64,000 nucleotides of DNA, taken from the NCBI GenBank assembly GCA_002269645.1, contig NIVC01002559.1:1-64000 (forward strand). The letters are read 5' to 3'. The notes beneath the pieces are model-generated. The model did not search any database and was not told where the DNA came from. It saw only the letters and a program-made list of their open reading frames with translations. Made by a program: the position numbers and the translations under genes. Of the stretch, positions 37,053-63,685 are shown piece after piece; the stretch's first letter is position 1, and every line of letters starts with the position of its first letter. Source of the DNA: Macrostomum lignano (taxonomy: Eukaryota).

Positions 37053-37133
37053 CTGAAAAAATTCAATAAATGGTAAGTAAAATCATGACTAAATGAACCA
37101 ATTGTCAATCTCTGATTTGACAACAATACTTAC

Positions 37134-37710: not shown

Positions 37711-40700
37711 AATTAATAATTGCTTGATGTCTATGTAGTTAGGCTTATAATTTAAAACTGCAACAAGAATGAAAATATTATGGAGTTTACTTGTATTGCA
37801 ATTTCTAACTGAGAGGGGTGCAGCCACTTTTTTATGCAGCTTATTCAATCATGCCTTAACAGATAAAAAACTTTTGAACTCTAGCACCTGGATTTTAGAA
37901 AACTATGAGCGTAATTATATTGTCATTTGCAAAAAAGTTGCAATTTAAGAATGAAAATCTGGACACTTGTTGCAAAATAGTATTGTTTTTAGGGTGTTGA
38001 CAGACAGTTTTATTTAAATTTCTAGATTTTTCTGGACTTTATAGTGTGGCTTTTAGGTTTCCAAAACTACATAGAATCATACTGCAGGAAATTTCATAAA
38101 TAAAATATTTGAAAATAGTATTTTTTGGAGCACATTTGCATGTCATCTACTTTCAGGTTAGTAGTAAGTTAAACAGAAGAATTTTAATGTATGTTAAAGC
38201 CAAGGCTCAATTTTGGCTTTCCTCACTAGATTAAAATCCCTAACTGCATTTTTTAGACCACCCCACCCTGCTCCAGTCTTATTGCTTTTATCTTAGAATT
38301 CTAGCCTAAAGCTGCTATGCACATTTCAATGGACTGCCTAGGCCCCTAATGTATATTAAAGCTGAACCAATTAGCAAGTTGTTTACACTTGCAAGCTTGG
38401 GCTTCTAAACTTATCAAAGTAATTTTAGTTGCCTTTGTTTTTATAACATAATAATAAAGTATTCTTTTTTGCTACTCAACTAAAAATAGAATGCTGCTTT
38501 AAGAAGTATATGTGCCTAAGTGGCCAATCTAATTATTTTAGTATTTGTGCTTCAAGCTTGAATTCATTATGGCCAGAATTTGGAATGCTAAATATAAAAT
38601 GCCAATCTGCAATGACAATCTAATTTTTTGTTATTTGACCTTGCTAATAAATTTAGTTTCTTTGGCTTAGGTCCTAGACCAACCATGAAGCAAAAATAAA
38701 GATAAATAAGACAAAATATAGTAGACAAAATTAGCATCAACCAATGCTAGCTAAGATCTTTATAAAAAGCTAAGATACTAATCATGGGCCTATTGTACTA
38801 GGCTAACAATATTTTAACAATAGTCACTGGAATGTGTTTTAAATGATATCAAGAAACCCTATAAATAAATAGGCTGCCAACAAGGAAATATTAACTTCTT
38901 TTAACTCCTTTTTACACATTTTTGCTTTAAAAAGATTGGTTATTACTTCTTTCTGCCTTGGTTATTGAGGACATCTAATCTAAGCTTTAGTAGAAAAACT
39001 CATTACCATTCTTAAGGACAAGACTTAGATTTACAATCTAAGAAATTGTATAATGCAAAAACATATACCAAAGGATTATAAGACCTAAGTTTAGAACCTA
39101 AGAACTCTGCCTTAGATAGGAGGGCAGAAAAACTATAAGAGTATAAACTATGGTCTTTTTTATCTCAATAATGCCTAGATTAAGAAAGAAACCCTCAATA
39201 AGAGCAAACATAAAGATTGAACTAAATAATACAACAATATAAGTATAGGCCTAGTGCTATTAGATCACTTAGGTCGAAAATACCTTAATATGCTACTAGT
39301 TCTATATATGGTAATGATTCTACATGATATACTACTAGCAATAGCAACATATCATATTTATTATAAGAAAATTAAAACATTGTATTAAGAATAAATAAAG
39401 AAAAAAGGCAAGCAAAGCTATTACAACTTGATATAGGCCTAGCTTTTCTTTTGGGTCCCAGGGCAAAAAAAGTAAATATTAACATACTAATAGCTTTTGG
39501 GATAACAGCTTTTCTTTTTTATTTCTTTAGACTTATAGCTATTAGGCCTACTTTTAGTGTATATTTCATAGTCCCAAGTATTCAATGCAATGTGTACATG
39601 AGAATTTTTTGCCTTGTATATTAGGCCCTATTAGGCCTAGTGATAGACTGGATGTGGATTTTTGCAAGTTTCCAAAACGGAATCCAAATGTACAAAAAAT
39701 TCTGAATCCATCCAAATCTGAATATCTGAATATGAGCAAAAAGTAAAAGGTAAATAGCAGGAGTAGGGCTAACTAAGGCATAACTATGGTTTCGTTCGTT
39801 ATATTATTTCTTGTTTTGAATTTGTTCCAGCGCACATAGAAATGGCTCGTTATATTATTTCAAGTTCTAATATACCTTTAGGTTCTAATGTACCTAATAT
39901 ACCTTTAGGTAGGCCTAACAAAAATGCCCCATCAAGCATCATCTAATTAATGATCTAAGTAATCAAGTAGGCTTAGTCTATTCTAATTCTTTAAGTGAAA
40001 TTCAAGTGAAATTGCAAAAATTAAAACTTAGTAGGCCTAGAGAGTAAATAAGTTTGAATTTACTTGTTGCTATTTGTTGCTTGAGCCCCTGATTCTAGCA
40101 ATTGAAGAGCTCTTCTTATCAGTGGCAGCGCAGTTTGCGGCAGTATCTGGTTAGGGGGGGAGGCAGTCACGGCCCCTTCCCCTACCAATTGTAATTAAAC
40201 AAATAAAAGTATTTGAATTAGAACACGAATTTTCTAAGAAAGTAAAAAATTACACAAATGACACACTTCTTATAAAACGAATGCGCAACACGAAATTTGC
40301 GAACAAACTTTAAAGAAAGAACGACAAAACACATGCGTACCTGCATGTGTTTAACTTGTTTTAGTGTTTTAACCGATCTATTTTAATTTCTGGATGAGTC
40401 AGATTACGTGCACCCGAGACATCCTGTAAATCTGTAATTGACCAAATTTTGTGTACCGTGTACATTGGAATCTCTGATCAAGTTAGCGAAAAGTGACTTA
40501 AAATTACAGAATCTACTTTTTTCTTCATTAATTATTTTAATTTTTTTCAATTTTAATGTCAAGGACTTCTAGACTAACAGGACGTAAAACTCAAAGATCG
40601 TGCAATTTTTTGGAGGCCACGATTTCCTGGAAAAAATACACTGCGAAGATAGGAAAAATCAGTTTTTCGTCACAAAATCTGTGATTGTATTTGATCTGGG

Positions 40701-40805
40701 GCAGTGAAGACTACCATTCTTTTAATTTAACATGCACAATATGTTACTCTATTATATTTTCATATAGCTGTGTAGTGAAGTTTTCATTTTCATATTGTTT
40801 TCACT

Positions 40806-41367
40806 TTATTTCATAAGCCCAAAGTTGCAAACTCACAAGTGGCATTAGCCAAACTTTTTGTGTTGTTCTTTTTAAAATAAAGTATAAAAACATTGCATGT
40901 AGGTACTCTTAGTCTTAAGCTAATATTGTAGGTTTAGTAACTATACTAATTCTTAGGCCTACTAGAACTAGACCTATCACTACACTATCTATCTAGCCTA
41001 ATAAGTAATTCAATTTAGACAATGACTTAGAGATTAGTATATTTAGATTTTTTTATTATATATAGATTACCAATAAATAGTTTCATATGGTTGGTTACCT
41101 AGGCTTGAGAAAGCTGTATTATCAGTTTTTAAGCCAAGCCTTTATTTAGGACTAAGATTTAAGAAGAATAGACTTAATCACAAAAATAGGCCCTAACCAT
41201 TTTTACTAGGTATCTATAAGAAAAAAACATTGATTAGTCGTTTTATAATTTTTATTTTAAAGGCTAAAAATATTATTATATTACAAATTTGAATAGCTTT
41301 TCTTTTCTTGAATTTGATATTTGGCTAATGCCACTTGTGAGTTTGCAACTTTGGGCTTATGAAATAA
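40806..41367. mobile_element. MITE with a perfect 48 bp terminal inverted repeat
   Basis: TTATTTCATAAGCCCAAAGTTGCAAACTCACAAGTGGCATTAGCCAAA (40806-40853) and its exact reverse complement (41320-41367). The interior is AT-rich and non-coding; the outer TA could be the TSD. Confidence 0.8.
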
Positions 41368-41949
41368 TGTTGTAGGCGTCTTTACTATTATTGTATTTTT
41401 ATTCCACTATGCCACCAAGTTGTCGCAGGGGTACACACTTCCTAGTTTATAATTACGCTACGGAATCAAGTTGTAATTTAAAATAGTTATTACTCCATAA
41501 AATTGCTTAGTCAATTGCTGCTTCTTAGAAAATATCAAGTCTAGAATTCTAATCTAAGGACTCCTTGGCGCATGACCAAGATGGCCACACACCAAGATGG
41601 CCACAGCTCTGAATGGCTGCTTGGATAGGAATAGGTCTATATATTTCCTCATTTCCTATTGGCTGTGATTGGGGTGGGGTATGATGTAGCTTCAAGTCTC
41701 GGAGAAGACAGATTTTGTTAGTGAAATTAGACTAAGTAAAACAAAAAACACTTCCCTTTACAGCAGGTATTACTACCTACTAAAGCTAGTAGCACTACTA
41801 GCACAAGACATTTGATTTTTGTATCATGGATAATAGTTTCAAACCTATCTCAATATACTAAAACTGACGTGTTGTTTGTATATGTTAAAAGTTAAAGGTA
41901 GAGGGTAAAGGTATTAGTTATGATAGAAGTAAGCAAAAATTGGAGTGCC

Positions 41950-44530
41950 TCTTGTCTCTCATCTTTTCTCTCATCTCTGCACTCTCGTCTCTTTTCTTTT
42001 CTCTGTCATTTCTCCCTCTCGTCTCTAATCTTTTCTCTCTCTCATCTCTGCCCTCTCCTCTCTCATCTCTTGCCCTCTCCTCTCTTATCTATTCTCTCTC
42101 ATATCTGCCCTCTTCTCTCTCATGTCTGCCCTCTTCTCTCTTTTCTCTCTCATCTCTGCCCTCTCCTGTATCATCTTTCTCTCTCTCATCTCTGCCCTCT
42201 CCTGTATCATCTTTCTCTCTCTCATCTCTGCCCTCTCCTCTCATCTTTTCTCTCTCATGTCTGCCCTCTCCTCTCATCTTTTCTCTCTCTCTCATCTCTG
42301 CCCTCACCTCTCTCCTTTCCTTTCTCCTCATGTCTATCCCCTCCTCTCTTCTCACCTCTTTGCTATCATCTCCCTTTTCCTCTTCATTCTCTTCTCCCTT
42401 CCCTCCTTTCTCCTCTCCATTAATCTCCCTTCTCCTCTCTCTCTCCGCTCGTATATAATCTCTCCTCTCATCAACTCTCTTCTCCTTTATTCCTTCGCCT
42501 CTCCTTTATCCTATGCTTGTATTTCTCTTCTCTATTCCTTACCCTCTCTCCTCACCTCTGGCCCGCTCTGTCATCAGGACTCCTCGCTTCGCTTTGGGGG
42601 CCAACGAAGCGGACTAGAAGGGCAGTCATGAGCTGGGTTCTCAATCGAGGTAAAAAGTTTGCCAACCCCTGCACTAAAAGCACCTGGCTTAGTCACATTA
42701 GATAAAAACTACATGTATAGTGGAATGGGATTGAGAACAACGTGAACTAGCCTCTCTACTCTGAACCTCTCTACTCTCAGCCTCTATCTACTCTCAACCT
42801 CTCTATTCTCAGCCTCTCCACTCTCAGCCTCTCTCTACTCTCAGCCTCTATCCACTCTCAACCTCTATCCCCAGCCCCTCTCTGCTCTGAGCCCCTCTCT
42901 GCTTTCAGCCCCTCTCTGCTCTCAGCCTCTCTCTACTCTCAGCCTCTACTTTCATCTTCTCTCTCAGCTCAGCTTATATCTAGTTCTAAAATCTGAAGTC
43001 ATACTCAAACAAAAACTTGTCTTTCGAAAACATGTATCGGCAAAATCTCTGGCCTCCTGTCTCTCTCTATGTCCCTCGGATCCTTTGAAACTCTATCTTC
43101 TCTTTTGTTTCCTCTCTCTCTCTTCTCTCTCTCTCTTCTCTTCTCTTCTTTCCTATCTCCTCTCTCCCATCTTCTCTCGTCGATCTTCCCTCACCTTTCT
43201 TCTCTTTCATCTTTGCTCTCTCTTCTCATTTATCTCTGGTCTCCACTCTCTCCCCTTAGGAAAGAAGGAAAGATAGAAAAGATAGATAGAAAACATAGGA
43301 AAGAAGCCTATGTTTGAAAAAGTGCCCGACTTGTACCAGCTGAGGCCAGCTAGAAGGCAACGCGGGAGAGATATTGTTGTAGAGTATCCAATCAAGAATG
43401 TGCCCACCCACCTTCTGGTGAATGGGGGCAGTACGCTGTCTTTGCTAAGAGCCAAAGACTATTCTAAAAAAATCACTGGAAGGAGCATGGAGGCCTTGGA
43501 GCCCCATGTGTGAAGGCCGTGTCATGTCATTAAAGATTATAGGACTGAGAAAATTTATTTATTAGGAGTTAGTCTCCCGTTCGACCCCCGCTGAGTGGCA
43601 GAATGGTAGTCAGCCCGTGATTGCTTAATCCCCTCCCAATTAGCGTATTGAAAGTTTGCTCGTGTTGCCCCGTTGGATACCGCTTTTCGCTTATTTACGT
43701 GCGCTTTCCATTATATTCAAACTATGTTGTGACTCCGTGCTCATGTGGCGATGTTTATATATTTAGGATTTGAGCTCGAACTTTGAACTCAAATTTGAGC
43801 TCGTACGGTATGTGTTTATTCCCTATAAGTCAATAATATCTTGGAAACCGGAAAAATTTCTATGGGTCTGCCCCGCAGGAGGTCCTGCCCCGCTGTTTAA
43901 AATTTTGTAGGAACAATGGAAGTCTGAGACTGTTAAAATTAGCACATTTCAGTTTGATTTCTCGTGTTTGTTCGCACCTCGTAGGTCAGTGCGAAATTCT
44001 CTATTCTATCTCCTCTATCATCTCGACCCTCTCTCCTATTATTTATTTCCTGTCTTATCTCCTCTCTCTCATCTCTCATCTGTACTCTCCTTTAACATCT
44101 CTCCTCTTTTTTCCCAACTCTCCCAACTCTTCTCTCAACTTTCTCCCCTTTACTCTTTCACCTCCCCTCTCTACTCTCTCCTCCCTCTCATCTCTCCTGC
44201 TCTCCCATCTCTCTTCTCCTTTCTACTCTCTCCCTTCTCCATTCTTCTATTTCCTCTCATCTCTCTTCTCTCCCTTCCCCTCTCTTCCTGTCCTCTCGAT
44301 TCTCCCCCTTTATTCTCCTTTCTCCTTCACTCCACTTCTCTCCCATTGTCTCTCATGTCTGCTCTCACATATTTCTCTTCTCTCTCCACTCGTCTTTATA
44401 ATCTCTTCCCTCTCCTCTCTCCTCTGTTCTAGCTCTACTGTCTCATTTCTCGTCTCTGCTTTCTCATCTCTCCTTTCTCCTCTTTCATCTCTCCTATCTG
44501 ATCTCTTCTCTCTTCTGTTTGTATCAGACT
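41950..44530 (+). repeat. TC-rich low-complexity tracts (~41950-42560, 42750-42970, 43050-43250, 43990-44530)
   Basis: Polypyrimidine tracts similar in style to the reverse complement of the array GA tracts. The overlapping ORFs are compositional artefacts. Confidence 0.85.
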
Positions 44531-45398
44531 TGTGTCTGTACATGTATTTAGAGGTTCGGCTTAATTTGACGAGATTTCAGAATTGTCAGACTTTGATTGA
44601 AGCCTTGCGTTTCTTGGGTATCAGTACTTGCTGAAAAATACATGCATCTCATATCTGTGCAAATTTGCCGCAGTGCATAAAGAGTACAAATGATATTTAC
44701 ATAAATAAATCTGAGGCTTCATGCTAAGTGCTGCATGCAAAGTCACTATATTGAGTTATTTATTTACGAGCCAAATTTTTATCATGGTTACCAACCATAG
44801 CAGTTGGCTAAAAATGTTAAAACTGAAAAAAGATTGCAACGAAAAATAACGATATGGCTGATTTGAGGTGAGCTGTTTTATATAGATAGATTTTTATCTC
44901 CACGCAAGCCAGTCAGTTATTTAGACTATTTATGACTTCCAATCGTATCGTATCAGTACAGGCCGCAATTGAAAAAAAGTTGCTCTAGGGTTGGCTTGAG
45001 TGTAACGATCCGTGACCATAAATTAAGTCTTTGCTCATTCAAGCTTGAATTGAAAGCAACCCCGCCTACCTTTTGTATTCAACTTAAACAAAATAATACG
45101 GCTCGTATGTGAACTCAATAGAAGTGGAAATCAAAAATAAAAACACTGCATCAGTTGCCACCCATTCACGATATTTCATATTATTTCTAGATACCAAGGT
45201 ATTGACAACAGTTTGTAGCAATGAAAAAATTGTTTTTCTATGAAATCTTTCATCAGGCCTAGCTGTTCTGCGAACTTGGGTGCAAAAGGTATCTCATATC
45301 TGCATTTTAATAGCTCGTATACGTAGCTCATATAATATCATGCATAATGATGGGGATGATGGGATAATGATGAATTACGGAGGCAGAAGTGCACTGAG

Positions 45399-47202
45399 TC
45401 ACACATACATGCAGTGACTAGCCAAGTAAAGGCTGTTTGCTCTGTAAGTGCGACGCAATGAACCCCCCCATCCCAAATTTGAGCGTAAAACAAAGTGCTG
45501 GTGATGAGTAACAGCCTGGCCCCCGTGAACTTGCTGCTGTAGCCGTCGCACCCGTTCAGCATCACGCTCTAGCAGGTCCAGCAGAAGGTAGAAGTTCAGT
45601 GGTTTCTGTCCACGCTTGTTGAGTTGACCATGCCAGGCTTCTACGTCGTTGTTGGTCCTCTTGTACTGCTCGAAGACGCAGATAGCATCACGGTCCCAGA
45701 CGGGATGCTGCAGCCAGGTAGTGCGCACATACTCGGCTAGCTGTAGGAGTAGCTCATTACCTATTGCCAGTTGAATGCAGGCTGCCAGATCATCAAGCAT
45801 ACAAGTGGACGGCAAGCATGGAATCGAGAGAAGCATGCGTACAACCAACTTAACTGCTGGAACAGTGGAATACTGCACCTGAAGGCCAAGGTTTTGGACA
45901 CGCCTGAAGACAGCTTGACAATAATGGAAGAAGCAGCCGCGAACTTGCGCACCTGGATATACCAGCCGAATTGCTTGCCAAGCAGCAGCTTCAAAGTCAC
46001 AGGTGAACTTGATTGGCGCATTACCTGTTGACTCCCAAAGGCAACGAAAGCAGGCTTGATAATCAGCTTGAGCCTTACCGGTTACCGGACATCAAAAAGA
46101 AGGCAAGTGGTACCAGCCTTTCCTGCCCATCAAAGCGAATCGCGCCGTGTACACTGTAAAGCTGTTTGAAAGGTGCCTTGACAATGCTAAAAGTTCCGTC
46201 GCACTTCAAGATTCGTCGGGTTGATAATAGTTCTCGCTGAGTTGTCGTCATGAAGACGAAGTGTCGCCCGTTTGTCTCAGGAACTGTCACATCCTGCAAA
46301 TGAAACTGGGCAGGTACATGTCTAGGATCAACTTGGAAATGTACGTCAACAGGTTCCATAGGGCGATCTTTTTTGCGACTGTAATTAGCATTGCGACTCA
46401 ATGACTCAATACTAAGCACCTCCTGCACTTCAGGTGAAAATTCTCTTAACTTCTCCTCCGCGATAATTCTAGCAGAGGTAAACAACATGCGCTTTGCTCC
46501 CTCCTTTACCTCCTTTGCTGCCTTTCTCTTCTGAGCTGGCTGATCAACTGGATCGCACGTGTGCGGAGCAAGGGCTTCTATGGTTTCATCAGCACGGCGG
46601 ACTGCGGAGCCATGACAGTGCAGTGATAAACGCTTAGTGCAGCGATAGTACGTGTTGCCATTTCGCCGCGTTTTTTCATCCATCAGATGGCCAAGGTCTC
46701 GTTGGGCATACTGCACTAGAAGGTCTTTTCCGTGACTGCATCCTGCACCTGTAAGAATCTCAAAGGGCTGGGGAGGTGGGCTGCGGGGCGGTGCAAGCTC
46801 TGCTGGAGGAATTTGAATGGATTCTTCCAGAGCTGGATCAGGGTCATTGAAATCTGGATACTGGTAAAGAAAATTTTCTGCTTGTGCTGGAATCAAATGC
46901 ACTGGTTCTGGATTTTCAGCAGGCAGAGGAACAGCCGCTGGTCCAGAATTCGGGGCTTGTACATGTACCACTGCAGCATCTGCAGCTTGAGACACTGCTA
47001 AGTTACCTGCAGGAGCCCGTCTATTGCATTGATTGCAAAGCCAGAAAAACTCACCGACATTTCTCATTGCAGAATACTGATCGATTGTGACGCGACTATC
47101 ACATGCACGGTGCTGCCAATTCAAGCATTGAGAACACTCAATTGCTTCTTGTCCATCGCAAACTGGCTGCAGACAGACTACACATGGATATGCGCCTGCC
47201 AT
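45399..47202 (-). pseudogene. PHD finger + FLYWCH/WRKY-like + MULE transposase, frameshifted
   Basis: N-terminal C4HC3 PHD (CVVC..ECSQCLNWQHRAC..WLCNQC); YYRCTKR..C..HTC zinc domain; KCDGTF..FKQLYSVHG. After the frameshift at 46075-46088 it continues CDFEAAAWQAIRLVYPGAQVRGCFFHYCQAVFRRVQNLGL..RTNNDVEAWH. Confidence 0.9.
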
Positions 47203-47528: not shown

Positions 47529-48090
47529 TGTAGTAGGGCATTATTTTAGAAACGGAAATTTTGCAGGTTTAAATATGCTTTTACCCTACTATCAGTAGTT
47601 TCAACCCGGGGAAATAATTAGAGCAGGGGTAAGTGGATAAAATCGGGGTTCCTTTAGAAATACAGAGCAGTTGGGCTCTTGGGAAAGAAAAGCTTCGTTG
47701 GAGTGTCTTCTCCTGTTTAACTTAGAGAGTTCACGCAGAAGTGGTAAGGAAGGGAAATATAAGGGTTAGGCTTGCACAGAGGAGTCTTGCCTCTAAAACT
47801 GGGAGTCTTGCCCAAGCACTATAACGGGAATAAGGAAATAAGGGAATTAATGTAAGAGCAAAACAAATAACCTTTTGTACGCATTCTCTTTATTATTAAA
47901 AATTTCCAACTGTTAACTATAATCTTTGGTGTCCTGACTCACTTCTTTAATCTAAAGTACTAGAATTAGGGAAAGCAGGAAACCTGGTGGCAGCGAAACT
48001 ACCGAAATCTCAACCAGTATATCCACTTAAATCCTTAATAGCAAATAAGAAAACCAGTAGCCTAAACCGCGAGGTACCACGACTTGTCCA
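47529..48090 (+). repeat. 5' LTR (562 bp)
   Basis: TGTAGTAGGGC..GACTTGTCCA. By eye it differs from the 3' LTR at two positions, both G in this copy and A in the other. Confidence 0.95.
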
Positions 48091-48092
48091 AT

Positions 48093-48102
48093 TGGTGGCA
48101 GC
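48093..48102 (+). promoter_or_regulatory. Primer-binding site TGGTGGCAGC (tRNA-Leu-type)
   Basis: Starts 2 nt after the LTR CA and is complementary to a tRNA 3' end ..GCTGCCACCA. Confidence 0.8.
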
Positions 48103-51233: not shown

Positions 51234-51254
51234 ACATTATACTTATACTTAGAC

Positions 51255-53987
51255 ATGAAACTAAAGGCTAAGAAATGTCACCTTTTCAAATCAGAATTAC
51301 AATATCTAGGACACGTCATAGGCAAAGCAGGAATTAAGAGAGATGCGTCGAAATTAGAAGCAATTAGGAACTGGCCGAAACCTAAATCTGTGACAGAGCT
51401 TCGAAGTTTTCTCGGACTCTGTAATTACTATAGAAAATTCGTTAGAGATTTTGCCGAGGTAGCAGCACCACTCTGTGAGTTAACGAAGAAGAACATCAAG
51501 TGTATCCAGGACAATTGGACCAGGATTCATGATGAATGCTTCGAATTGTTGAAGGAACGGATGTGTTCCGAAGAAGTGCTTGTTTACCCAGAGTTCAATA
51601 CAGACCCCCAAGTTTATTTTGTGTTAGACACTGATGCATCAGATGTCAGAATTGGGGCGGTCTTGAATCAAGTTCAGAGCGACGGCATTGAAAGGCCGAT
51701 CGCGTATTATAGTCGGAAAATGAGGCAGTCAGAAACTAGATATCCAATTACGAGGAAGGAGCTTCTAGCGATTGTTGACTCGCTGAAGTACTTTAGATTT
51801 TACCTCGTAGGAAAACATTTTAAGGTGCGCACTGATCACAATGCCCTAACCTGGTTGCTTCGCCAAACCGAACAGACAGGCATTTTAGGTCGTTGGATCG
51901 AAAGACTTTCCGAATTTGATTTTGAGATAGAACATAGGAGTGGCCCTAAACATGTGAATGCTGACGCTCTATCCAGGATCCCTGATCCTCAACCGGAAGA
52001 GATGTCCCCACATGCCAGGTCGCTAAGCTGTAGGGCAACTGTGAATACAGACCCAGCATCAGCTTTTACTGTCAGCTCAGGCAATTCCGCGTTCGCTGAA
52101 ACCTGTAGCTCGAGCAGTGGAGTTCCGTCATGCTGTTCGTCACAAGACACTGTCACGAACCGACACAATACTCCGATCTTTAGTAGCAGTAGGCTAGACA
52201 ATAGACAGGGACAGGAGCCTAAAACCGGAAATCCGCCTGCATGCAATGCCCTGCTCAGTGACTATCTCCGTAGCCCAGTTCGCCGTGACCAATTGATCGC
52301 AGCACAGCTGGCCGATCCGGCGGTAGGCTTTGTTAGAAATTTAATTGAGAATGACTCGCCTAAACCGACATTTCAAGAACGACTAGAGTTAACCCACGAC
52401 TGTAGGAACCTCTTAGGTTACTACGAGTTGCTCAGAATTGAGGACGGCGTACTCAAAGCAAACTTATCTATGGGGCAGACTGATCCAAAGGTAGTGTTGC
52501 CCAAGTCTCTGGATAGTGAAGTCTTTCACCAATTCCATGATTCACCGTTAGCGGGACACCTAGGTCGAGATAAAACTTATCAGAGAATTAAAATTCGATT
52601 TTGGAGGCCAGGATTAGCAACAGCAGTTGAACGCTACGTAGCCAAATGTAAATCATGCCTAGAAAGCAAAACTAGACGAAGAATTAAGGCACCAATTCAG
52701 AACTACCCTGTAGTCGAACCGTTCGGTAGATTGCACATAGATCTAATAGGACCTATTGGCCAAACCAGCAAATCAGGAAACAAATATGTACTTTCAGTCA
52801 TAGACAGCACTAGCAAATTTCCATTCGCATTCGCAATTAGGAATCAGAAGGCTAAAACAGTTATCAAAATTCTACAAGAACGAGTTTTCGCTGATTTCGG
52901 GATTCCACAATGGATTCACACAGACCAGGGAATACAGTTCACTGGTAGGGCCTTTAAGAAATTTTTAGACCTCTATGGCATTAGACACACTCGAACCACT
53001 AGTTATCAACCGCAGAGCAATGGCTTAGTAGAAAACCTTAATAAGCAGATTAAATCAATTCTCACCTGTTTACTGGAGAAGGAGCATTCCAACTGGGACG
53101 TTCTGTTGCCAGGTTGCATAACAGCTCTGAGAACCAGCACGCACACTGCCACAGGATTTAGTCCGCACTATTTAGTCTTTGGACGAGAGGCTAGAGTGCC
53201 CTGTGACAATGAGCTGAACGAGCCAAAGCAGTTTCAGGACCTGCCATCTTATGTCCAGGATCATCAGCAGAATCTGCAGGAAGGCCAAGAACTAGCAAGA
53301 AAGAGATTAAAATTAGTGCAACAAAACCGTGAGCAAGAGTACTCTAATAAGCCTAAGCCAAAAATATTGCCTGTAGGAAGCTTAGTATTTATCAATAATC
53401 CAGTAATTGCTAACACAGAGGCTAACAAATTTCACAGAAAACAGAGGGCAGTTTACGAAATTGTAGAACAATTATCAGAAGTAGTCTTTAAGATCAGACC
53501 AGTCACCAAAAATAAGAAGGCTAGGAAGGAAGAACTTATTATGCATAGGGATAATTTAATGAAGGTACCACAAGCAGATTATCAGGAAGAAGAAGCTAGT
53601 ACTAAGCCAAAAGAGCAGAGGAAACAATACAATAGGGAACAGTTAGCCAATAGCCAACCGAATGTGTACAATGACTCAGAAAGTGAAGACGAGTACGAAG
53701 ACGCAGTGCAGTTTATGCCAGTGCAGCATCAAAATAATGTGCAGTCAGTGCCAATTCAACAAGTGCAGCATCAAAATAATAATCAGAATAATTTAGTAGG
53801 TGTACAAGGAGTTATGCCAGTACAATTAAGTAATAACAATAATTTAGGGATTAATTTAGAAGCTAGGCCAGCTAGAGAGCGTCATGCTCCAGATAGGTTA
53901 ACGGTCAGGCCAAATCAGAAAAGTTATGTACAGAGGATAGCGGCGTTGTTTAACCCACTCAACTTCTTTCAGCCCAATTCTCAATAA
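51255..53987 (+). CDS. pol: Pol, 3' part (RT thumb, RNase H, integrase), same frame as the 5' part
   Basis: LQYLGHVI, LRSFLGLCNYYRKFV, LDTDAS, VRTDHNAL, HHCC zinc domain and DDE core (HIDLIGP / HTDQG / NGLVENLNK). Confidence 0.93.
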   Translation: MKLKAKKCHLFKSELQYLGHVIGKAGIKRDASKLEAIRNWPKPKSVTELRSFLGLCNYYRKFVRDFAEVAAPLCELTKKNIKCIQDNWTRIHDECFELLKERMCSEEVLVYPEFNTDPQVYFVLDTDASDVRIGAVLNQVQSDGIERPIAYYSRKMRQSETRYPITRKELLAIVDSLKYFRFYLVGKHFKVRTDHNALTWLLRQTEQTGILGRWIERLSEFDFEIEHRSGPKHVNADALSRIPDPQPEEMSPHARSLSCRATVNTDPASAFTVSSGNSAFAETCSSSSGVPSCCSSQDTVTNRHNTPIFSSSRLDNRQGQEPKTGNPPACNALLSDYLRSPVRRDQLIAAQLADPAVGFVRNLIENDSPKPTFQERLELTHDCRNLLGYYELLRIEDGVLKANLSMGQTDPKVVLPKSLDSEVFHQFHDSPLAGHLGRDKTYQRIKIRFWRPGLATAVERYVAKCKSCLESKTRRRIKAPIQNYPVVEPFGRLHIDLIGPIGQTSKSGNKYVLSVIDSTSKFPFAFAIRNQKAKTVIKILQERVFADFGIPQWIHTDQGIQFTGRAFKKFLDLYGIRHTRTTSYQPQSNGLVENLNKQIKSILTCLLEKEHSNWDVLLPGCITALRTSTHTATGFSPHYLVFGREARVPCDNELNEPKQFQDLPSYVQDHQQNLQEGQELARKRLKLVQQNREQEYSNKPKPKILPVGSLVFINNPVIANTEANKFHRKQRAVYEIVEQLSEVVFKIRPVTKNKKARKEELIMHRDNLMKVPQADYQEEEASTKPKEQRKQYNREQLANSQPNVYNDSESEDEYEDAVQFMPVQHQNNVQSVPIQQVQHQNNNQNNLVGVQGVMPVQLSNNNNLGINLEARPARERHAPDRLTVRPNQKSYVQRIAALFNPLNFFQPNSQ

Positions 53988-53989
53988 TC

Positions 53990-54736
53990 ATGGCCGACGC
54001 CCCGCTCCGCGTCTATCCGACAAAGAGAATATATGGCCAGCGCAGAACTAGCCAAGAAGAAAATGAGCCCCCGCAAGTTAGGGCAGTGCAACTGGCCAAG
54101 CGCAGAGAAGAGCGTAAGAAGCCGAGATTGGACCAGCAAAAAGAGGAAGAAGGAAGACTGGCCATAGATGTCGATCTAGAAGAAGTAGAGAGGGCGACTA
54201 AGCAAAAGGAGGAAGAGTTCAGAGACGAGATGGCGCGATTTATGGAGGAGATACGGCAACACGAGGAAGGGGTAGAGCCCATAGACGAGCAGGAGGAGAC
54301 GGCCGCAGACGAAACGAAGTGCCAACCAGAGCAACGTCAGCCCGAGCAGTGCCACACAACGCGAGGCCAGCCTGAGCCTGCGCCGAGCCCGCTCATTGAT
54401 TATGCCTCACTGCTCAGGGTAGACCTGGGTGACACGCCGGCCTTTGAAGAGACCAGCACGGAGCGTCCGGACAGCCCCGGGACACAGGCGCGGAAATTCC
54501 GCAAGTGCCGTCGCGCTCTTAAGCGGTCTATCCTGGCCACAGGAAGAACAGGGCACTTCGAGGCTCAGCTACCGGAAGCGTGCGACCATTTCCTGGCCAC
54601 GTCGACGGCAGAAGAGGCAGTCAGGTGTTTTGAAATCGCCTGCTCATACTGCCTACAGTACGCAGAAGGAAGGGCTCGGGGACCAATCAGCATGAGGGCG
54701 ACCAATCAGCATGAGGGCGACCACCGAGCAGCTTGA
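53990..54736 (+). CDS. Third ORF of the gypsy element, 248 aa, not Env-like
   Basis: ATG 2 nt after the pol TAA, inside the LTR-bounded unit. GC-rich, with no signal peptide or transmembrane segment visible. Confidence 0.75.
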   Translation: MADAPLRVYPTKRIYGQRRTSQEENEPPQVRAVQLAKRREERKKPRLDQQKEEEGRLAIDVDLEEVERATKQKEEEFRDEMARFMEEIRQHEEGVEPIDEQEETAADETKCQPEQRQPEQCHTTRGQPEPAPSPLIDYASLLRVDLGDTPAFEETSTERPDSPGTQARKFRKCRRALKRSILATGRTGHFEAQLPEACDHFLATSTAEEAVRCFEIACSYCLQYAEGRARGPISMRATNQHEGDHRAA

Positions 54737-55344
54737 GTTCATCGCCAGTCGATTCGACCCTGCTAATCAGCTGATTCCGGTAAATGGACTACTTTAATTG
54801 TCCACGCAAAATACCCTAAATCTCCGGCCAGTCAATTAAGCAAAACTAGGGAACTTAATAACTCTTCCAAAGCAACATAATTACACATGCTCGATGCCAT
54901 CAAATATTTTTTATCATTACCATCTTTTGGAGTAAGAACTTGCCAATTATTTTACCGCTTTTTTTTGCACCGCATTTTTTTAGATGTTGTATACACTTGC
55001 CATTATTTGCGTTCTTTTGTTCAACTTACTCAACATTTAGTGTAACTAGTAAGCATGTCATTAATTCCTCTTATCATACTTAAAAATTAATCCAGGTCTT
55101 AATAATACAATGCCATACGCATATTTCAACTTGTTCAACCACTTAATATCATTAAGGTTTTACGACTATGCATACCATTAACTTTTCCACTTGTCATACG
55201 TGTAGACTTAATAATCCTTGCTCACTACATTGTTTTATATTCAGTCATCGCTGATAAGCGCACTAATACTTATTACGTAACTAAAATTTTGTTAATAAAT
55301 ATAATCATCAATGTACAAAAGGGGGTTTTGCACATTTTTGTAGC

Positions 55345-55354
55345 GAGGGGGAGG
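55345..55354 (+). promoter_or_regulatory. Polypurine tract
   Basis: GAGGGGGAGG directly abuts the TG of the 3' LTR. Confidence 0.9.
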
Positions 55355-55916
55355 TGTAGTAGGGCATTATTTTAGAAACGGAAATTTTACAGGTTTAAAT
55401 ATGCTTTTACCCTACTATCAGTAGTTTCAACCCGGGGAAATAATTAGAGCAGGGGTAAGTGGATAAAATCGGGGTTCCTTTAGAAATACAGAGCAGTTGG
55501 GCTCTTGGGAAAGAAAAGCTTCGTTGGAGTGTCTTCTCCTGTTTAACTTAGAGAGTTCACGCAGAAGTGGTAAGGAAGGGAAATATAAGGGTTAGGCTTG
55601 CACAGAGGAGTCTTGCCTCTAAAACTGGGAGTCTTGCCCAAGCACTATAACGGGAATAAGGAAATAAAGGAATTAATGTAAGAGCAAAACAAATAACCTT
55701 TTGTACGCATTCTCTTTATTATTAAAAATTTCCAACTGTTAACTATAATCTTTGGTGTCCTGACTCACTTCTTTAATCTAAAGTACTAGAATTAGGGAAA
55801 GCAGGAAACCTGGTGGCAGCGAAACTACCGAAATCTCAACCAGTATATCCACTTAAATCCTTAATAGCAAATAAGAAAACCAGTAGCCTAAACCGCGAGG
55901 TACCACGACTTGTCCA
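55355..55916 (+). repeat. 3' LTR (562 bp)
   Basis: Near-identical to 47529-48090. Confidence 0.95.
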
Positions 55917-56019
55917 TTGGTGTGTGGCCATCTTGGTCTTACACCGACTCCTTGAATCTATGCAAGTCGCCCTGGTAGCAGTGTCGAGCGGCAAACACTG
56001 GTCTACATGTAGTTATGAA

Positions 56020-56290
56020 TCTTACTACTATTATTATTACTACTATTAATTCCCTATATTTAGTTGCGGGCTCCCTGGGAAGGAGTTGCCCGACTCGTCA
56101 ACCGTCTATTTCTGGCTTCTTACAGCTTTCCTGGCCTCTTATGGCTTTTTCTGGCTTCTTACAGCTTTCTCTGGCCTCTTACGGCTTTTTCTGGCTTCTT
56201 ACAGCTTTCCTGGCCTCTTACGGCTTTTTCTGGCTTCTTACAGCTTTCTTACTTCTAACAGCTTTCTCTCCTGTCTTGCTTTCCAGTGAC
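56020..56290 (-). repeat. ~40 bp tandem repeats next to a (TAA/TAG)n tract; possibly the 3' end of a retroelement
   Basis: TCTGGCTTCTTACAGCTTTCCTGGCCTCTTACGGCTTTT repeats at 56105-56280 and (TAC/TAT)n at 56022-56046. No TSD found. Confidence 0.35.
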
Positions 56291-56601
56291 TAAGACAACA
56301 CGTTTTGCTTTTCTCAACCGAATCAAGGAAACGTCGGGCGAAGTTTTAAAGCCCGAAAAACGCTTGTATTTATAGGTTTTACTGAGGGGGAGGACGGGTG
56401 CGCGGGACGTGCTTAAACAAAACATAATACTTCATCAATTTAAACTAAATAATTCTTCTTCGCTATAACAAAGGTTTCACTTAAACAAAATAATTCGGTA
56501 ACTAAGAAATTTGGCGTAAATTTGAAATGGTATAAGTATAAGAATATTGGGCCTGCCTCAATAAAGTGAAAACAATATGAAAATGAAAACTTCACTACAC
56601 A

Positions 56602-58437
56602 ATACAATACAATAATACAATAAATACAATGGCCACCGGCCACAAGTGGTCAGGAAAGGGGGGGACATTGTCAAAAAGCACGCTTAGCTGCGCAGTCTCT
56701 GATGAAGGTAGCGCCATTGATCTGATCAGGCGCCCTGGCGTCTTCTGTCAGACAGTCGACGAACCTCCGGGTCCGCGCCTGCCCCCGCCGGAACGGGCCC
56801 TGCTGCGTGTACAGCAAGACCTCCTGCAGCGGCTCCGGGCAGTAGGACTCGGCGCGAATGACGTGGCCCGCCAGCTTCAGGCGGCGCTGTCGCAGGGTCA
56901 CGCTGGGAGGGCTCAGCTTGGCCCGCTGGTAGAGAGCCTGGTTGGTGACGTGTTCGGCGTGACGGTGCACGCTGAAGGCAGCGCGCAGCAGGCTGGAGTG
57001 CGCCGCGTCCAGCTGGCGCTCCAGCACATCCGTCATGGTCCAGGTCTCGGCGTTGTAGAAGAGCACCGTTTCCACCACCGCCTGGAACAGTCTGGTTCTC
57101 AGCTGGTCTGGCAGGGCGTCGCTTTGGAGCACGATGCGCACTGAGCGGAAAGCCGCCCACGCAAGCCCTCTGCGACGCCGCAGGTCCTCCTGGACGCTGG
57201 GCACGAGACCACCAAGGTACCGGAACTGCTCACATCGGGGGAGCGGTGCTGCCGTTGCGCTGTCCATGCTGGGAAGGCGGATGACCGCTGGCAGATCTGC
57301 TGGCACAGTCAGGACCTCCGTCTTCTTGGCGTTGATCTTAAGGCCAACCTTCGCAGCGGCAGCAGCTAGGCCGTCGAGGAGGCGTTGAGCACCAGCAGCA
57401 GTGGATGCCAGCAGGGCGAGGTCATCAGCATATCCGAGGACTGCCAGCCGCTTCTCCGGGTGCCGGCTGCTCGTTCGCCTGCATAGGATGTAGCCGTCCG
57501 AGTTGTCCGGTAGTCCTGTCCGCAGCACCCAGTCCAAGATGAGGATGAACAGGAAGGGAGCGAGGGTGTCTCCTTGCAGGACTTCGGATGAGGTGGTGAA
57601 GAAGTCGGAAAGGCCGTCAGGTGTGATCACAGCAGCGTGCGTGTCGTGGTAGAGCGCCATCACTGCTGCAATCAGTTTCTCTGGCACGTTGTAGGCTCGG
57701 AGAACTAGTGGAATCACGCCTCGAGCCACCGAGTCGAAAGCCTTCAGGAAGTCGATGAACAGACAGAAAAGGTCCGACTGGCGAATGCGCGATTCCTCGA
57801 TAATTCTCCGGAGCGCCAGAATTTGCGTGACTGTACCACGTCGTGGCCGGAACCCATTCTGCTCGTACCGCAGGTAAGGGTCCAGCACTGGCTGCAAGCG
57901 CGACAGTAGCAGCTTGTTGTGCAGCTTGGCGGCACAGGACATCAGGGAGATGCCCCGATGTTCTTCAATCTTGTTGGTGCCCGGCTTCTTGGGGATTCCG
58001 ACGATATGTGCTCGGGTCCACTCCGGAGGTGCGACGCCAGTATCGAGAACGTTGTTGATCACCCTGGCGATCTCCTGGGCGACCTTGGGCAGTCTGAGCA
58101 CCTCGTTGGGAACTTCGTCGGGACCCGTTGCCTTGCCGCCTGGGATCTTCTTGGCGAGCTGACAAACATCGATTGCGGTCACATGGCCGGTACAGAAATG
58201 ATGCGGAGGCGGCAGTGGCGTGTCAGGGGGCAGCGCCAGCACATCAGGGAGCGCAGGTGGTGGCGCATTCACTATGCTAGCAAAAAAAGTCCCGCAGGCT
58301 GTTCTTGCGCTCATCCGGCGTGTCCCCAACCAGGTTGAGCGCCGTGCGTTGCTTCCTGCCAGTGAGGGTGTTGATGGCAGTCCACACGGTGCCGCTTTTC
58401 CTGTCCGGGGCGGCGGAGGTGACGGCGCGGATGGCTA
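56602..58437 (-). mobile_element. 5'-truncated non-LTR retrotransposon (RTE-like) with an (ATTGT)n tail and a 9 bp TSD
   Basis: CACTACACA at 56593-56601 and 58438-58446; microsatellite tail at ~56602-56630; inserted into the right TIR of the outer element. Confidence 0.9.
56671..58435 (-). pseudogene. LINE ORF2 reverse transcriptase fragment (endonuclease lost; one +1 frameshift near 58282-58288)
   Basis: KATGPDEV, RGISLMS, EQNGFRPRRG, FIDFLKAFDSV, LQGDTLAPFLF, LGYADDLALL, FRYLGG, RRLKLAGHVIR. The upstream frame ..WTAINTLTGRK..ERKNSLRDFF joins if one T of a T7 run is removed. Confidence 0.92.
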
Positions 58438-58627
58438 CACTACACAGCTACACAGCTACACAGCTATATGAAAATATAATAGAGTAACATATTGTGCATG
58501 TTAAATTAAAAGAATGGTAGTCTTCACTGCCCCAGATCAAATACAATCACAGATTTTGTGACGAAAAACTGATTTTTTCCTATCTTCGCAGTGTATTTTT
58601 TCCAGGAAATCGTGGCCTCCAAAATAT

Positions 58628-59623
58628 TGAGGTGGGGGTGGAGAAGTTTTAACAAAGTTGAAATTTGGAGGTCGGCCGGTAATTCTTCAAAACCGGTAGC
58701 GTTGCGTTCGCACGAATAAAACCGGAAAATCGCGCAGACGAATCACAACGAAATTCTTCTCCTTTACTCCGACTGCCGGGTTCTCAAGTCCGGGGGGAGG
58801 GTAGTTGTAATCGTAGCGGAGCGGTCGTAGAGCGGCACGGTCGTTCAGTTGTAGAAAACACTGGGGTAGATTTGACACCGTAAAGTAATGTGTCGATTTG
58901 CAGAGCTGATTACTGTCAGTAGGGTAGTTGCTGCCACCACCGTAATTTACGTATTACGGAACGTTTAGTGATCTCAGAGCTTTCTTTGAGATGAGATTTC
59001 GGTTATTTTACGCCCCACGGGCAAAGGATTCAAGATAGGCTATGGCTTAAGTCAACGGAATAAATATTAAGCGTTAATTTGTTGTTATTTATTAAAGTAG
59101 TTTGGTTATTATAATTTTAAAGCAGGTTGTTTATGGATTAATGAGTATTATAATGACGATGATGAATACACGGGCGCCGGTGCGCTAATAAACTAATAAA
59201 TTAATGAACCGTAGAGATAAACAGACAAGATAGTGAGGGAGCGATCGCGCAAGAAGAAAAGGGAAAAAATTGGCAACTGAGCATGAGTAGTTTATATAAG
59301 CAAAAGTAGGGCAACGTCCAAAGCATGGGGGAAAGATTAGCCAACAAGGGGGCCATACAATGGTTAAAGGAGTAATCACACAGAAAATATATAATGAACC
59401 GCTTAATTCCAACTAATGAAAAGGCTGTTAGCCAACGATGGGAAACTGATTAGCAACGGTGGGTCCACACACGGGGCCAACAGGAGGAGGGGGGTGATGT
59501 CATATAACAATGGTTGGACTCACGGGTTGGTATTCACGAAGAAAAAGAATACGGGCGCGCATTCAAAATGGAAAAAAAATTATTAAAATAAAATTATTAA
59601 ATGGTGGCAACCCCACTGCCACA
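58628..59623 (-). mobile_element. Solo LTR (996 bp) with ATAT TSD
   Basis: TG..CA ends flanked by ATAT (58624-58627, 59624-59627). Minus-strand TATATAAA at 59291-59298 and AATAAA at 59088-59093. Removing it restores the TIR seen at 40590-40620. Confidence 0.75.
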
Positions 59624-60166
59624 ATATTGCACGATCTTTGAGTTTTACGTCCTATTAGTCTAGAAGTCCTTGTTTAATGTATGTATGGTCATGCATGCTC
59701 GAGAGCACTTTGCTTTCAAGATTTTACGAACTTTGCTTTTAAATTTTTCACGAAGTTACCGCGCAAGTTTAAACAAAGTATAATACAGTTAAACTAGAAA
59801 GTTAAACTAAATATTGCTAAACTTGATTATCATAAAAATAAAGTGTTGACAGTCATAAATCTGTTTTTTTTACCGCGAAGTGGCAGTACCAGTGTTCATT
59901 TTTTGTTACCGAAGTGGCTGCTGTTATACATCTTAACTTTAGCCCCACTATCTAATCATAGTGTGCATCAGTGCATATGACATTGAAACTCTGTTGCTAA
60001 GTCCCTAAATCCATGTAGGGACTTAAAAAGCTCTCCTTGGAAAGTAAAAAAAAATTATCTTAGATTCTTAACTATAAGTTTTGACTTTATAGCCATTACC
60101 ACCCAACCACAACATAGGCATGGCATTGACAATCTATGTTAATACTTGAATCCTAAATATCAAGAA

Positions 60167-63663: not shown

Positions 63664-63685
63664 TGAGCTGTGGCCTGTGTCACAT

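What the first reader, a model, noticed from the sequence alone, without database searches (positions are those of the whole stretch)
40560..59672. 19.1 kb nested transposon still bounded by intact termini and an exact 8 bp TSD
Seen: TTTAATGT|CAAGGACTTCTAGACTAA.. and ..TTAGTCTAGAAGTCCTTG|TTTAATGT. The ~250 bp TIRs differ at only about two positions by eye. The right TIR is split by a solo LTR and a LINE, each with its own TSD, and the left TIR supplies both empty sites. Inside are a MITE, a MULE-like element and, in the MULE TIR, a gypsy. Removing the nested pieces leaves about 1.3-1.8 kb. Known: CANRG termini with an 8 bp TSD fit the P superfamily (hAT also makes 8 bp TSDs). Inference: a small non-autonomous element became an insertion hotspot and could in principle move as one unit carrying three classes of TE.
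Basis: partly seen in the sequence, partly recalled or inferred. Interest (0 to 1): 0.7.

Follow-up and report, generated by a model that had tools for sequence, protein, structure and literature searches.

The report
Nested transposon pile-up in a small element
A 1.3 kb non-coding cut-and-paste transposon with 250 bp inverted ends has been hit by four other mobile elements, one of which was hit again, swelling it to 19.1 kb; the anatomy is unusually clean, but this kind of nesting is ordinary in repeat-rich genomes.

Summary
Window 40560-59672 is bounded by an exact 8 bp duplication (TTTAATGT) and by 250 bp inverted termini that differ by two substitutions and one 1-bp indel. The left arm is continuous. 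The right arm is split into three pieces by a 996 bp TG..CA insert (probable solo LTR, 4 bp TSD ATAT) and by a 5'-truncated LINE (7 bp TSD). Inside lie a 556 bp MITE (TA TSD) and a 14.4 kb MULE (8 bp TSD, 44 bp TIRs, frameshifted transposase). An 8.4 kb Ty3/gypsy element (4 bp TSD, LTRs 2 substitutions in 562 bp) sits in the MULE's right TIR. Removing every insert and one copy of each TSD leaves exactly 1,307 non-coding bases.

The superfamily cannot be decided: hAT and P both fit the TSD and terminus, and no transposase or second copy could be found. The ideas that it is an insertion hotspot, or that it could move as one unit, are untested. The source looks like a Macrostomum-like flatworm, and the region is packed with satellites.

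Long-TIR Galileo elements in Drosophila carrying nested secondary insertions are a close published precedent. Novelty is low.

The parts
40552..40559 (.). Left copy of the outer element's 8 bp target-site duplication, TTTAATGT
40560..40808 (+). Left TIR of the outer element, uninterrupted. It starts CAAGGACTTCTAGAC. It serves as the empty-site reference for the inserts in the right TIR.
40809..41364 (.). MITE-like element, 556 bp, with 45 bp perfect TIRs (TTTCATAAGCCC...) and TA TSD at 40807-8 and 41365-6, inserted at the inner edge of the left TIR
41367..41558 (+). Outer element, left internal non-coding segment
41567..55945 (-). MULE, 14,379 bp with the gypsy and 5,987 bp without it. It has 44 bp TIRs (GGYGYAWGACCAAGATGGCCACACACCAAGATGGCCACAGCT) and TSD GACTCCTT at 41559-66 and 55946-53. 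The transposase is encoded on the minus strand.
41940..44640 (.). CT-rich degenerate low-complexity block inside the MULE
46075..47202 (-). MULE transposase, N-terminal 375 aa ORF (weak PHD-like and FLYWCH-like zinc fingers, start of the catalytic domain). It aligns to residues 1-382 of the 633 aa relative P0241 at 48% identity.
45402..46091 (-). MULE transposase, C-terminal 230 aa in another frame (Pfam MULE PF10551). It aligns to residues 380-583 of P0241 at 52% identity. The two parts overlap at 46075-46091, so the frameshift lies there.
47529..55916 (+). Ty3/gypsy LTR retrotransposon, 8,388 bp, with TSD TTGG at 47525-28 and 55917-20, inserted inside the right MULE TIR between two copies of CCAAGATGGCCACA
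47529..48090 (+). Gypsy 5' LTR (562 bp, TGTAG...GTCCA), followed by an AT spacer and the PBS TGGTGGCAGC
55355..55916 (+). Gypsy 3' LTR (562 bp, 2 substitutions against the 5' LTR), preceded by a polypurine tract
48547..49575 (+). Gypsy gag ORF (Retrotrans_gag and zinc knuckle)
49641..53987 (+). Gypsy pol (RT, RNase H, integrase) in one frame, broken by an in-frame stop at 51231-51233 just after the YLDD motif
55954..56559 (+). Outer element, right internal non-coding segment, including a 20/39 bp tandem array at 56103-56269
56560..56601 (-). Right TIR, innermost piece (100% match to 40769-40810)
56602..58455 (-). 5'-truncated LINE, 1,854 bp, with a stop-free 552 aa RT ORF at 56671-58329. It aligns to residues 401-934 of a 936 aa APE+RT relative. 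It has a (TTGTA)n-type 3' tail and TSD CTACACA at 56595-601 and 58456-62. Two extra copies of the target octamer lie at the 5' junction.
58456..58627 (-). Right TIR, middle piece (98.9% match to 40603-40775)
58628..59623 (.). Probable solo LTR, 996 bp, TG...CA, with TSD ATAT at 58624-27 and 59624-27. It has no ORF and no other copy in the window.
59624..59672 (-). Right TIR, terminal piece, ending ...GTCTAGAAGTCCTTG
59673..59680 (.). Right copy of the outer element's 8 bp TSD, TTTAATGT

Best explanation
A 1,307 bp non-autonomous cut-and-paste DNA transposon inserted into AT-rich DNA between satellite blocks of a Macrostomum-like flatworm genome. It has 250 bp near-identical TIRs, a CAAGG terminus, no coding capacity and an 8 bp staggered-cut TSD.

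It then stayed in place and accumulated independent insertions, each by its own mechanism:
- a TA-targeting MITE;
- an autonomous-type MULE (8 bp TSD);
- an LTR retrotransposon (4 bp TSD), later reduced to a solo LTR by LTR-LTR recombination;
- a 5'-truncated LINE inserted by target-primed reverse transcription (7 bp TSD).

Later a Ty3/gypsy element integrated into the MULE's right TIR (4 bp TSD). The result is a three-layer, 19.1 kb nest.

Shown: the boundaries, the TSDs, the empty sites, the protein identities and the exact base accounting. Inferred: in-situ sequential build-up, solo-LTR origin by recombination, and mobilisation of the outer element in trans by a transposase of unresolved superfamily (hAT or P most compatible).

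The clustering most likely reflects tolerance and retention of insertions in a repeat-rich region, not active targeting.
For: - Exact TSDs for all six elements.
- TIR arms 250 bp with 2 substitutions and 1 indel.
- Right-arm pieces collinear with the intact left arm.
- Removing the inserts and one copy of each TSD leaves 1,307 bp with no stop-free stretch over 104 codons.
- MULE transposase: Pfam PF10551, 6,424 relatives, relatives that carry full MULE and FLYWCH domains, N-terminal half collinear with a 633 aa relative, and one frameshift.
- Gypsy: gag, RT, RNase H and integrase; 78% identity to a Macrostomum lignano pol. That relative has the same LTR termini, the same PBS and a 4 bp TSD.
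- LINE: RT ORF collinear with residues 401-934 of a 936 aa APE+RT protein, with a simple-repeat tail.
- The surroundings are dense satellite and minisatellite DNA.
- Precedent: about 1.5 kb Galileo copies with ~600 bp TIRs carrying nested DNA-transposon and LINE-like insertions, each with its own TSD. The authors attributed that accumulation to reduced recombination (PMC2775673).
Against: - No second copy of the outer element was found anywhere, so it is defined from a single copy and its family and superfamily are unverified.
- The solo-LTR call rests on TG..CA ends, a 4 bp TSD and weak terminal inverted similarity. A 7 bp direct repeat (AATATTG) also fits the junctions, and no intact relative was seen.
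- The order of the four primary insertions cannot be determined.
- Four hits in 1.3 kb against none recognised in 5.3 kb of flanks gives (1307/6585)^4, about 0.0016, uncorrected for ascertainment. This leaves room for some real local preference.
Confidence: 0.85

Rival explanations
1. The composite was assembled, wholly or partly, at another locus and then transposed here as one 19 kb unit using the outer termini (a macrotransposon).
For: Both outer termini are intact over the terminal 47 bases, with one mismatch at position 19. The 8 bp TSD is perfect, and the nested elements look young: gypsy LTRs differ by 2 in 562 bp and the LINE ORF is stop-free.
Against: No second copy of the composite or of the outer element was found. 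Only about 45-49 bp of the right TIR remains next to the terminus. The rest is displaced about 1 kb and 2.9 kb inward. By general knowledge of cut-and-paste elements, transposition frequency usually falls steeply with length. A perfect TSD is equally expected for a fairly recent insertion of the 1.3 kb element.
Confidence: 0.06
2. The outer element, and its long TIRs in particular, is a genuine integration hotspot that attracts several TE classes, for example through DNA structure or chromatin.
For: There are four primary insertions in 1,307 bp against none recognised in 2.7 + 2.6 kb of flanking AT-rich DNA. Three of the four lie in or at the edge of the TIRs. The gypsy also landed in a TIR, the 44 bp TIR of a 6 kb MULE.
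Against: The locus was picked because it is a nest. Three of four in the TIRs is not unusual when the TIRs make up 38% of the element (binomial p about 0.16, own calculation). The five target sites are unrelated in sequence, and the integration mechanisms differ (DDE transposases, integrases, TPRT). The M. lignano relative of the gypsy sits in unrelated AT-rich DNA. Old, unrecognisable TE fragments in the flanks cannot be excluded.
Confidence: 0.2
3. The outer structure is not a transposon but an inverted duplication or an assembly artefact, and the 8 bp match is chance.
For: Only one copy is known.
Against: The chance of the 8/8 match is about 3e-5. The repeat ends exactly at the duplicated octamer with a CA...TG terminus. 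Each internal junction has its own exact TSD and a matching empty site on the other arm, which a chimeric assembly would not produce.
Confidence: 0.03

Closest known systems
Galileo (P superfamily) non-autonomous copies with nested secondary insertions at Drosophila buzzatii inversion breakpoints (PMC2775673, PMC3573991)
   Same: Both are small elements of about 1.5 kb with very long TIRs (575-610 bp there, 250 bp here) and a 7-8 bp TSD. Both host nested DNA transposons and a LINE-like element, each with its own TSD. Those sites were described as hotspots for secondary TE insertions.
   Different: Galileo makes 7 bp TSDs with a GTAGTAC consensus, and its P-type transposase is known. Here the TSD is 8 bp (TTTAATGT), no transposase partner is known, the host is a flatworm-like genome, and the nest is deeper and includes LTR elements.
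hAT-superfamily non-autonomous elements
   Same: The TSD is 8 bp. The CAAGG terminus fits the YARNG terminus recalled for hAT (from memory, Repbase classification).
   Different: hAT TIRs are typically short (about 5-30 bp), whereas these are 250 bp. The TSD fits only half of the nTnnnnAn target pattern recalled for hAT. No hAT transposase relative could be linked.
Nested TE clusters of large plant genomes (for example wheat 3B: 30,199 nested insertions, up to 8 layers; PMC4290129)
   Same: It shows layered insertion of TEs into TEs, reconstructable from TSDs and collinear fragments, and includes a solo LTR.
   Different: There the hosts are mostly LTR retrotransposons. Here the outermost host is a small DNA transposon whose own inverted arms supply internal empty-site controls.
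MULEs with long TIRs (PMC3310237) and FLYWCH-type animal MULEs
   Same: The inner element is a bona fide MULE with a MULE DDE domain, a FLYWCH-like finger, TIRs and an 8 bp TSD. The outer element shares the long TIRs and a TSD within the MuDR range (4-10 bp, PMC10045372).
   Different: The outer element's terminus (CAAGG...) is unrelated to the resident MULE's (GGCGCATGACC...), and it encodes nothing.

Membership tests
P superfamily (outer element) | 7-8 bp target-site duplication (PMC5199201) | tested here: met
   Exact 8 bp TTTAATGT on both sides. hAT, Merlin and MuDR also produce this length.
P superfamily (outer element) | CANRG terminus (recalled from the Repbase classification, not checked in a held paper) | tested here: met
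   Both ends read CAAGG. The same pentamer also fits the hAT YARNG pattern, so this does not discriminate.
P superfamily (outer element) | An autonomous relative with the same termini that encodes a P-type transposase | not testable with these tools
   The outer element has no ORF. There is no other copy in the window or in two metagenome scans. The source genome is not in the collections.
hAT superfamily (outer element) | 8 bp TSD and YARNG terminus (terminus pattern recalled from memory) | tested here: met
   8 bp TSD and CAAGG terminus.
hAT superfamily (outer element) | Short TIRs (typical rather than strictly defining) and the nTnnnnAn target pattern (both recalled from memory) | tested here: not met
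   The TIRs are 250 bp. The TSD TTTAATGT has T at position 2 but G, not A, at position 7.
hAT superfamily (outer element) | An autonomous relative with a hAT transposase (BED, DDE, hATC) | not testable with these tools
   Same reasons as for the P superfamily.
MULE / MuDR (inner element 41567-55945) | Mutator-type DDE transposase | tested here: met
   Pfam PF10551 scores 28.8 bits against a cut-off of 27.6. There are 1,036 relatives at E<=1e-10. The top relatives carry full MULE and FLYWCH domains. The N-terminal ORF is collinear with the 633 aa relative. The gene is broken by a frameshift at about 46075-46091.
MULE / MuDR (inner element) | TIRs and a TSD in the MuDR range (4-10 bp, PMC10045372) | tested here: met
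   44 bp TIRs with 3 mismatches near the tip, once the gypsy is removed. TSD GACTCCTT.
Ty3/gypsy LTR retrotransposon (47529-55916) | Two LTRs, PBS and PPT, gag then RT-RNase H-integrase in that order, and a 4-6 bp TSD | tested here: met
   562 bp LTRs with 2 substitutions. Pfam gag, RVT_1, RT_RNaseH and rve in that order. PBS and PPT present. TSD TTGG. The M. lignano relative has the same LTR ends and PBS and a 4 bp TSD. The pol frame carries an in-frame stop in RT.
Non-LTR retrotransposon / LINE (56602-58455) | LINE-type RT whose full-length relatives carry an APE endonuclease, with 5' truncation, a 3' repeat tail and a TSD | tested here: met
   RVT_1. The ORF aligns to residues 401-934 of a 936 aa Exo_endo_phos+RVT_1 protein. 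It has a (TTGTA)n-like tail and TSD CTACACA. The clade (RTE-like, judged by size and single ORF) was not tested.
Solo LTR (58628-59623) | TG...CA termini and a 4-6 bp TSD | tested here: met
   TGAGG...GCCACA flanked by ATAT on both sides. The junctions also allow a reading as a 7 bp direct repeat.
Solo LTR (58628-59623) | Homology to the LTRs of an intact element of the same family | tested here: inconclusive
   No match to the gypsy LTR or to anything else in the window or the fetched loci. The genome could not be searched.
Tc1/mariner-type (Stowaway-like) MITE (40809-41364) | TA TSD (PMC5199201), TIRs, small size, no ORF | tested here: met
   TA on both sides, 45 bp perfect TIRs, 556 bp. Copy number and a transposase partner could not be tested.
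Composite transposon that moves as a unit | The same composite, with the same internal junctions, at a second locus with a different TSD | not testable with these tools
   No second copy in the window. The source genome is unavailable.

The most novel reading that the evidence does not exclude
The 19.1 kb nest is, or recently was, mobilisable as one unit through its intact outer termini, carrying a MULE, a gypsy element, a LINE fragment and a solo LTR as cargo. Alternatively, the long TIRs of this family act as a true multi-class integration hotspot.
Probability: 0.07. Interest if true: 0.5.

Novelty: new member of a known kind. Interest (0 to 1): 0.2.

Why it matters
The locus is a very clean worked example of TE nesting. 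Every layer keeps its TSD, and the inverted arms give built-in empty-site controls. That makes it useful for curating a flatworm repeat library and for benchmarking tools that resolve nested TEs.

It also defines several candidate families: a long-TIR non-autonomous element, a FLYWCH-type MULE, a gypsy lineage shared with Macrostomum lignano, an APE-type LINE and a MITE.

It does not reveal a new mechanism. Nested accumulation in repeat-rich, low-recombination DNA is well documented.

Tried and rejected
- Other copies of the outer TIR: none in the window, and none in two exact-pattern scans of metagenome contigs covering TIR positions 1-22 and 21-44.
- Exact-protein look-ups of three window ORFs, to locate the source genome: none on record.
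- Word-indexed homology search with the MULE N-terminal ORF: no hits. The index-free search later found thousands of relatives.
- Rfam and tRNA scans of the window: nothing.
- BLAST of the outer element, MITE, MULE body, solo LTR and flanks against the fetched M. lignano and metagenome loci: only the gypsy LTR end and the LINE matched.
- k-mer search for subterminal repeat motifs in the TIR that might point to hAT or P: nothing informative.
- Flank survey for ORFs and inverted repeats: no TE recognised.
- Rejected reading 1: a 12-15 bp 'TSD' around the gypsy. The apparent long repeat is the 14 bp motif that is duplicated inside the MULE TIR. The true TSD is 4 bp.
- Rejected reading 2: a 9 bp MULE TSD. 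It would leave the two TIRs out of register by one base.

Full report
**1. Check of the observation**

The sequence at the stated coordinates reads ...tttaatgt|CAAGGACTTCTAGACTAA... on the left and ...TTAGTCTAGAAGTCCTTG|tttaatgt... on the right. The octamer TTTAATGT occupies 40552-40559 and 59673-59680. With the local base composition, an 8/8 match at fixed positions has a probability of about 3e-5. The terminal 33-mer occurs only at these two places in the 64 kb window, against 0 expected by chance.

Repeat finding and self-BLAST show that the left arm, 40560-40810, is continuous. The right arm consists of three collinear pieces:
- 59619-59672;
- 58456-58629 (98.9% identity);
- 56560-56601 (100% identity).

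I removed every nested insert plus one copy of its TSD and aligned the two arms. They match over 250 bp, with substitutions at positions 19 and 48 and a 1-bp indel in an A-run at position 95. Similarity decays within about 12 bp beyond that. The residue is exactly 1,307 bp, 36.9% G+C, with no stop-free stretch over 104 codons. The six element sizes and their TSDs sum to the 19,113 bp span.

**2. The nested pieces**

(a) MITE, 40809-41364. It is 556 bp with 45 bp perfect TIRs and TA on both sides. It sits at the inner edge of the left TIR.

(b) MULE, 41567-55945.
- It has 44 bp TIRs that contain a tandemly duplicated 14 bp motif, CCAAGATGGCCACA. The TSD is GACTCCTT.
- On the minus strand, a 375 aa ORF has weak PHD-like and FLYWCH-like zinc-finger matches (below Pfam's cut-offs). 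It is followed in another frame by 230 aa that match Pfam MULE, PF10551.
- An index-free HMMER search found 6,424 relatives of the C-terminal part, 1,036 of them at E<=1e-10. The best is 633 aa long.
- The best relatives scanned carry complete MULE domains, and three of the six also carry FLYWCH domains.
- The N-terminal ORF aligns to residues 1-382 of the 633 aa protein, and the C-terminal part to residues 380-583.
- This is therefore an autonomous-type MULE disabled by at least one frameshift near 46075-46091.
- About 2.7 kb of its body is CT-rich low-complexity sequence.

(c) Ty3/gypsy element, 47529-55916.
- It has gag, RT, RNase H and integrase domains in the gypsy order, and 562 bp LTRs that differ by two substitutions.
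- Its pol is 78% identical to a Macrostomum lignano protein.
- In that species' contig the relative has the same LTR termini (TGTAGTAGGG...GTCCA), the same AT spacer and PBS (TGGTGGCAGCTTAG), and a 4 bp TSD.
- This fixes the boundaries here and gives a 4 bp TSD, TTGG.
- The element sits inside the right MULE TIR, between the two copies of the 14 bp motif. The left MULE TIR is the exact empty site.
- The pol frame has an in-frame stop just after the YLDD motif, at 51231-51233, so this copy is defective.

(d) LINE, 56602-58455, minus strand.
- A stop-free 552 aa RT ORF aligns to residues 401-934 of a 936 aa endonuclease+RT protein from a 3.45 kb metagenome contig. The copy is therefore 5'-truncated and lacks the endonuclease.
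- It ends in a (TTGTA)n-like tail and is flanked by CTACACA.
- Two extra copies of the target octamer lie at the 5' junction.

(e) Probable solo LTR, 58628-59623. This 996 bp insert has TG...CA ends, ATAT on both sides, no ORF and no other copy in the window. I accept this as a probable solo LTR. The junctions can also be read as a 7 bp direct repeat, and no intact relative could be searched for.

**3. Surroundings and source**

The first 20.7 kb of the window is a GA-rich higher-order repeat. Positions 21-37 kb hold at least ten different minisatellite arrays back to back, and more arrays follow at 62-64 kb. The immediate flanks of the nest (2.7 kb and 2.6 kb) are AT-rich, with no long ORF and no TIR structure.

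The gypsy and LINE relatives point to a Macrostomum-like flatworm. No window ORF is on record as an exact protein, so the source genome is not in the searchable collections.

**4. How it most likely arose**

The outer element has the hallmarks of a non-autonomous cut-and-paste transposon mobilised in trans: long TIRs, defined CA...TG termini, an 8 bp staggered-cut TSD and no coding capacity.

After its insertion, four elements entered it independently, by three different chemistries:
- DDE transposition (the MITE with TA, the MULE with 8 bp);
- integrase-mediated insertion (4 bp), followed by LTR-LTR recombination to a solo LTR;
- target-primed reverse transcription (the truncated LINE, with a 7 bp TSD and a repeat tail).

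The gypsy then entered the MULE.

All components look young. The LINE ORF is open, the gypsy LTRs are 99.6% identical, and the MULE has a single recognised frameshift. The order of the four primary hits cannot be resolved.

In-situ build-up is inferred, not shown. The alternative is that the composite moved here as a unit. It cannot be excluded, but it has no support. It is also made less likely by the 19 kb size and by the fact that only about 45-49 bp of the right TIR is still contiguous with the terminus.

**5. Superfamily**

The literature held here gives these TSD lengths:

| Superfamily | TSD | Source |
|---|---|---|
| P | 7-8 bp | PMC5199201 |
| Tc1/mariner | TA | PMC5199201 |
| Merlin | 8 bp | PMC10045372 |
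| MuDR | 4-10 bp | PMC10045372 |
| LTR elements | 3-6 bp (retroviral integrases 4-6 bp) | PMC10045372 |

The CAAGG terminus fits both the CANRG (P) and the YARNG (hAT) patterns. I recall both patterns from the Repbase classification and did not check them in a held paper.
- The long TIRs are unusual for hAT but are known in the P superfamily (Galileo; PMC3573991, PMC2775673).
- The terminus is unrelated to that of the resident MULE.

Without a transposase-bearing relative, the assignment stays open between P and hAT, with MuDR less likely.

**6. The 'hotspot' claim**

Four primary hits in 1,307 bp against none recognised in 5,278 bp of flanks would have a probability of about 0.0016 under uniform insertion (own calculation). 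But the locus was selected because it is a nest. The target sequences are unrelated, the mechanisms differ, and unrecognisable old fragments in the flanks cannot be excluded.

In the closest precedent, about 1.5 kb Galileo copies with roughly 600 bp TIRs carry nested BuT3, BuT4, BuT5 and LINE-like insertions, each with its own TSD. The authors called those sites hotspots for secondary insertions and attributed the accumulation to reduced recombination (PMC2775673). Nesting up to eight layers deep is routine in wheat (PMC4290129). I therefore read the pile-up as retention in a permissive, repeat-rich region, with perhaps a 20% chance of a real local preference.

**7. Verdict**

The locus adds new members of known kinds. 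It is a tidy annotation and teaching example, not a new phenomenon.

It was never printed or rebuilt as a whole.

Noticed in passing
window 1-20700: GA-rich (GC skew +0.3 to +0.6) higher-order tandem repeat with units of about 2.3-5 kb at 78-97% identity. It contains a 30 bp subrepeat (GTTTCACGGAGAGGATTTCGATGGTGTTCA) and a perfect 368 bp x2 duplication at 10012-10747.
   Followed up: partly
window 21215-37427: At least ten unrelated minisatellite arrays lie back to back: 23 bp x59, 18 bp x24, CTAC x182, 11 bp x43, 58 bp x17, 24 bp x41, 20 bp x22, 24 bp x67, 29 bp x17 and 24 bp x10. Their ORF translations give only spurious repeat-driven Pfam hits.
   Followed up: partly
window 41940-44640 versus 1-20000: The CT-rich low-complexity block inside the MULE is 65-72% similar, on the opposite strand, to the GA-rich blocks of the macrosatellite at 1-20 kb. 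It is unclear whether the MULE captured satellite sequence, seeded the satellite, or the match only reflects composition. No MULE TIR motif occurs in the 1-20 kb region.
   Followed up: partly
window 58420-58470: The 5' junction of the truncated LINE carries two extra tandem copies of the target octamer CTGTGTAG plus a partial TGTAG, in addition to the TSD. This could come from microhomology or template switching at 5' end joining, or from later slippage.
   Followed up: no
window 47511-47534 and 55911-55945: The gypsy integrated inside the 44 bp MULE TIR, exactly between two copies of CCAAGATGGCCACA. The TSD plus flank (TTGGTG) happens to equal the last spacer base plus the first five PBS bases of the element itself, so BLAST over-extends the LTRs to 571 bp. 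The M. lignano relative sits in unrelated AT-rich DNA, so this is probably coincidence.
   Followed up: partly
window 53990-54736: A third gypsy ORF (248 aa, in a different frame, downstream of integrase) has no Pfam match. It was not tested whether it is an env-like or other accessory gene.
   Followed up: no
window 46075-47202 (minus): The MULE N-terminal ORF found no homologue in the word-indexed 5.8-billion-protein search. Yet it is 48% identical over 386 aligned positions to a protein recovered by the index-free search. This shows how much sensitivity the word index loses.
   Followed up: yes
window 62243-63037 and 63685-63999: Further minisatellites (30/34/98 bp units, and a 21 bp unit x15) lie on the right of the nest.
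   Followed up: no
L003 18067-18703 and 21846-23663: The Macrostomum lignano contig that carries the gypsy relative also holds a LINE fragment 65% identical to the window's LINE and a long tandem array. The two genomes therefore have similar repeat landscapes.
   Followed up: no
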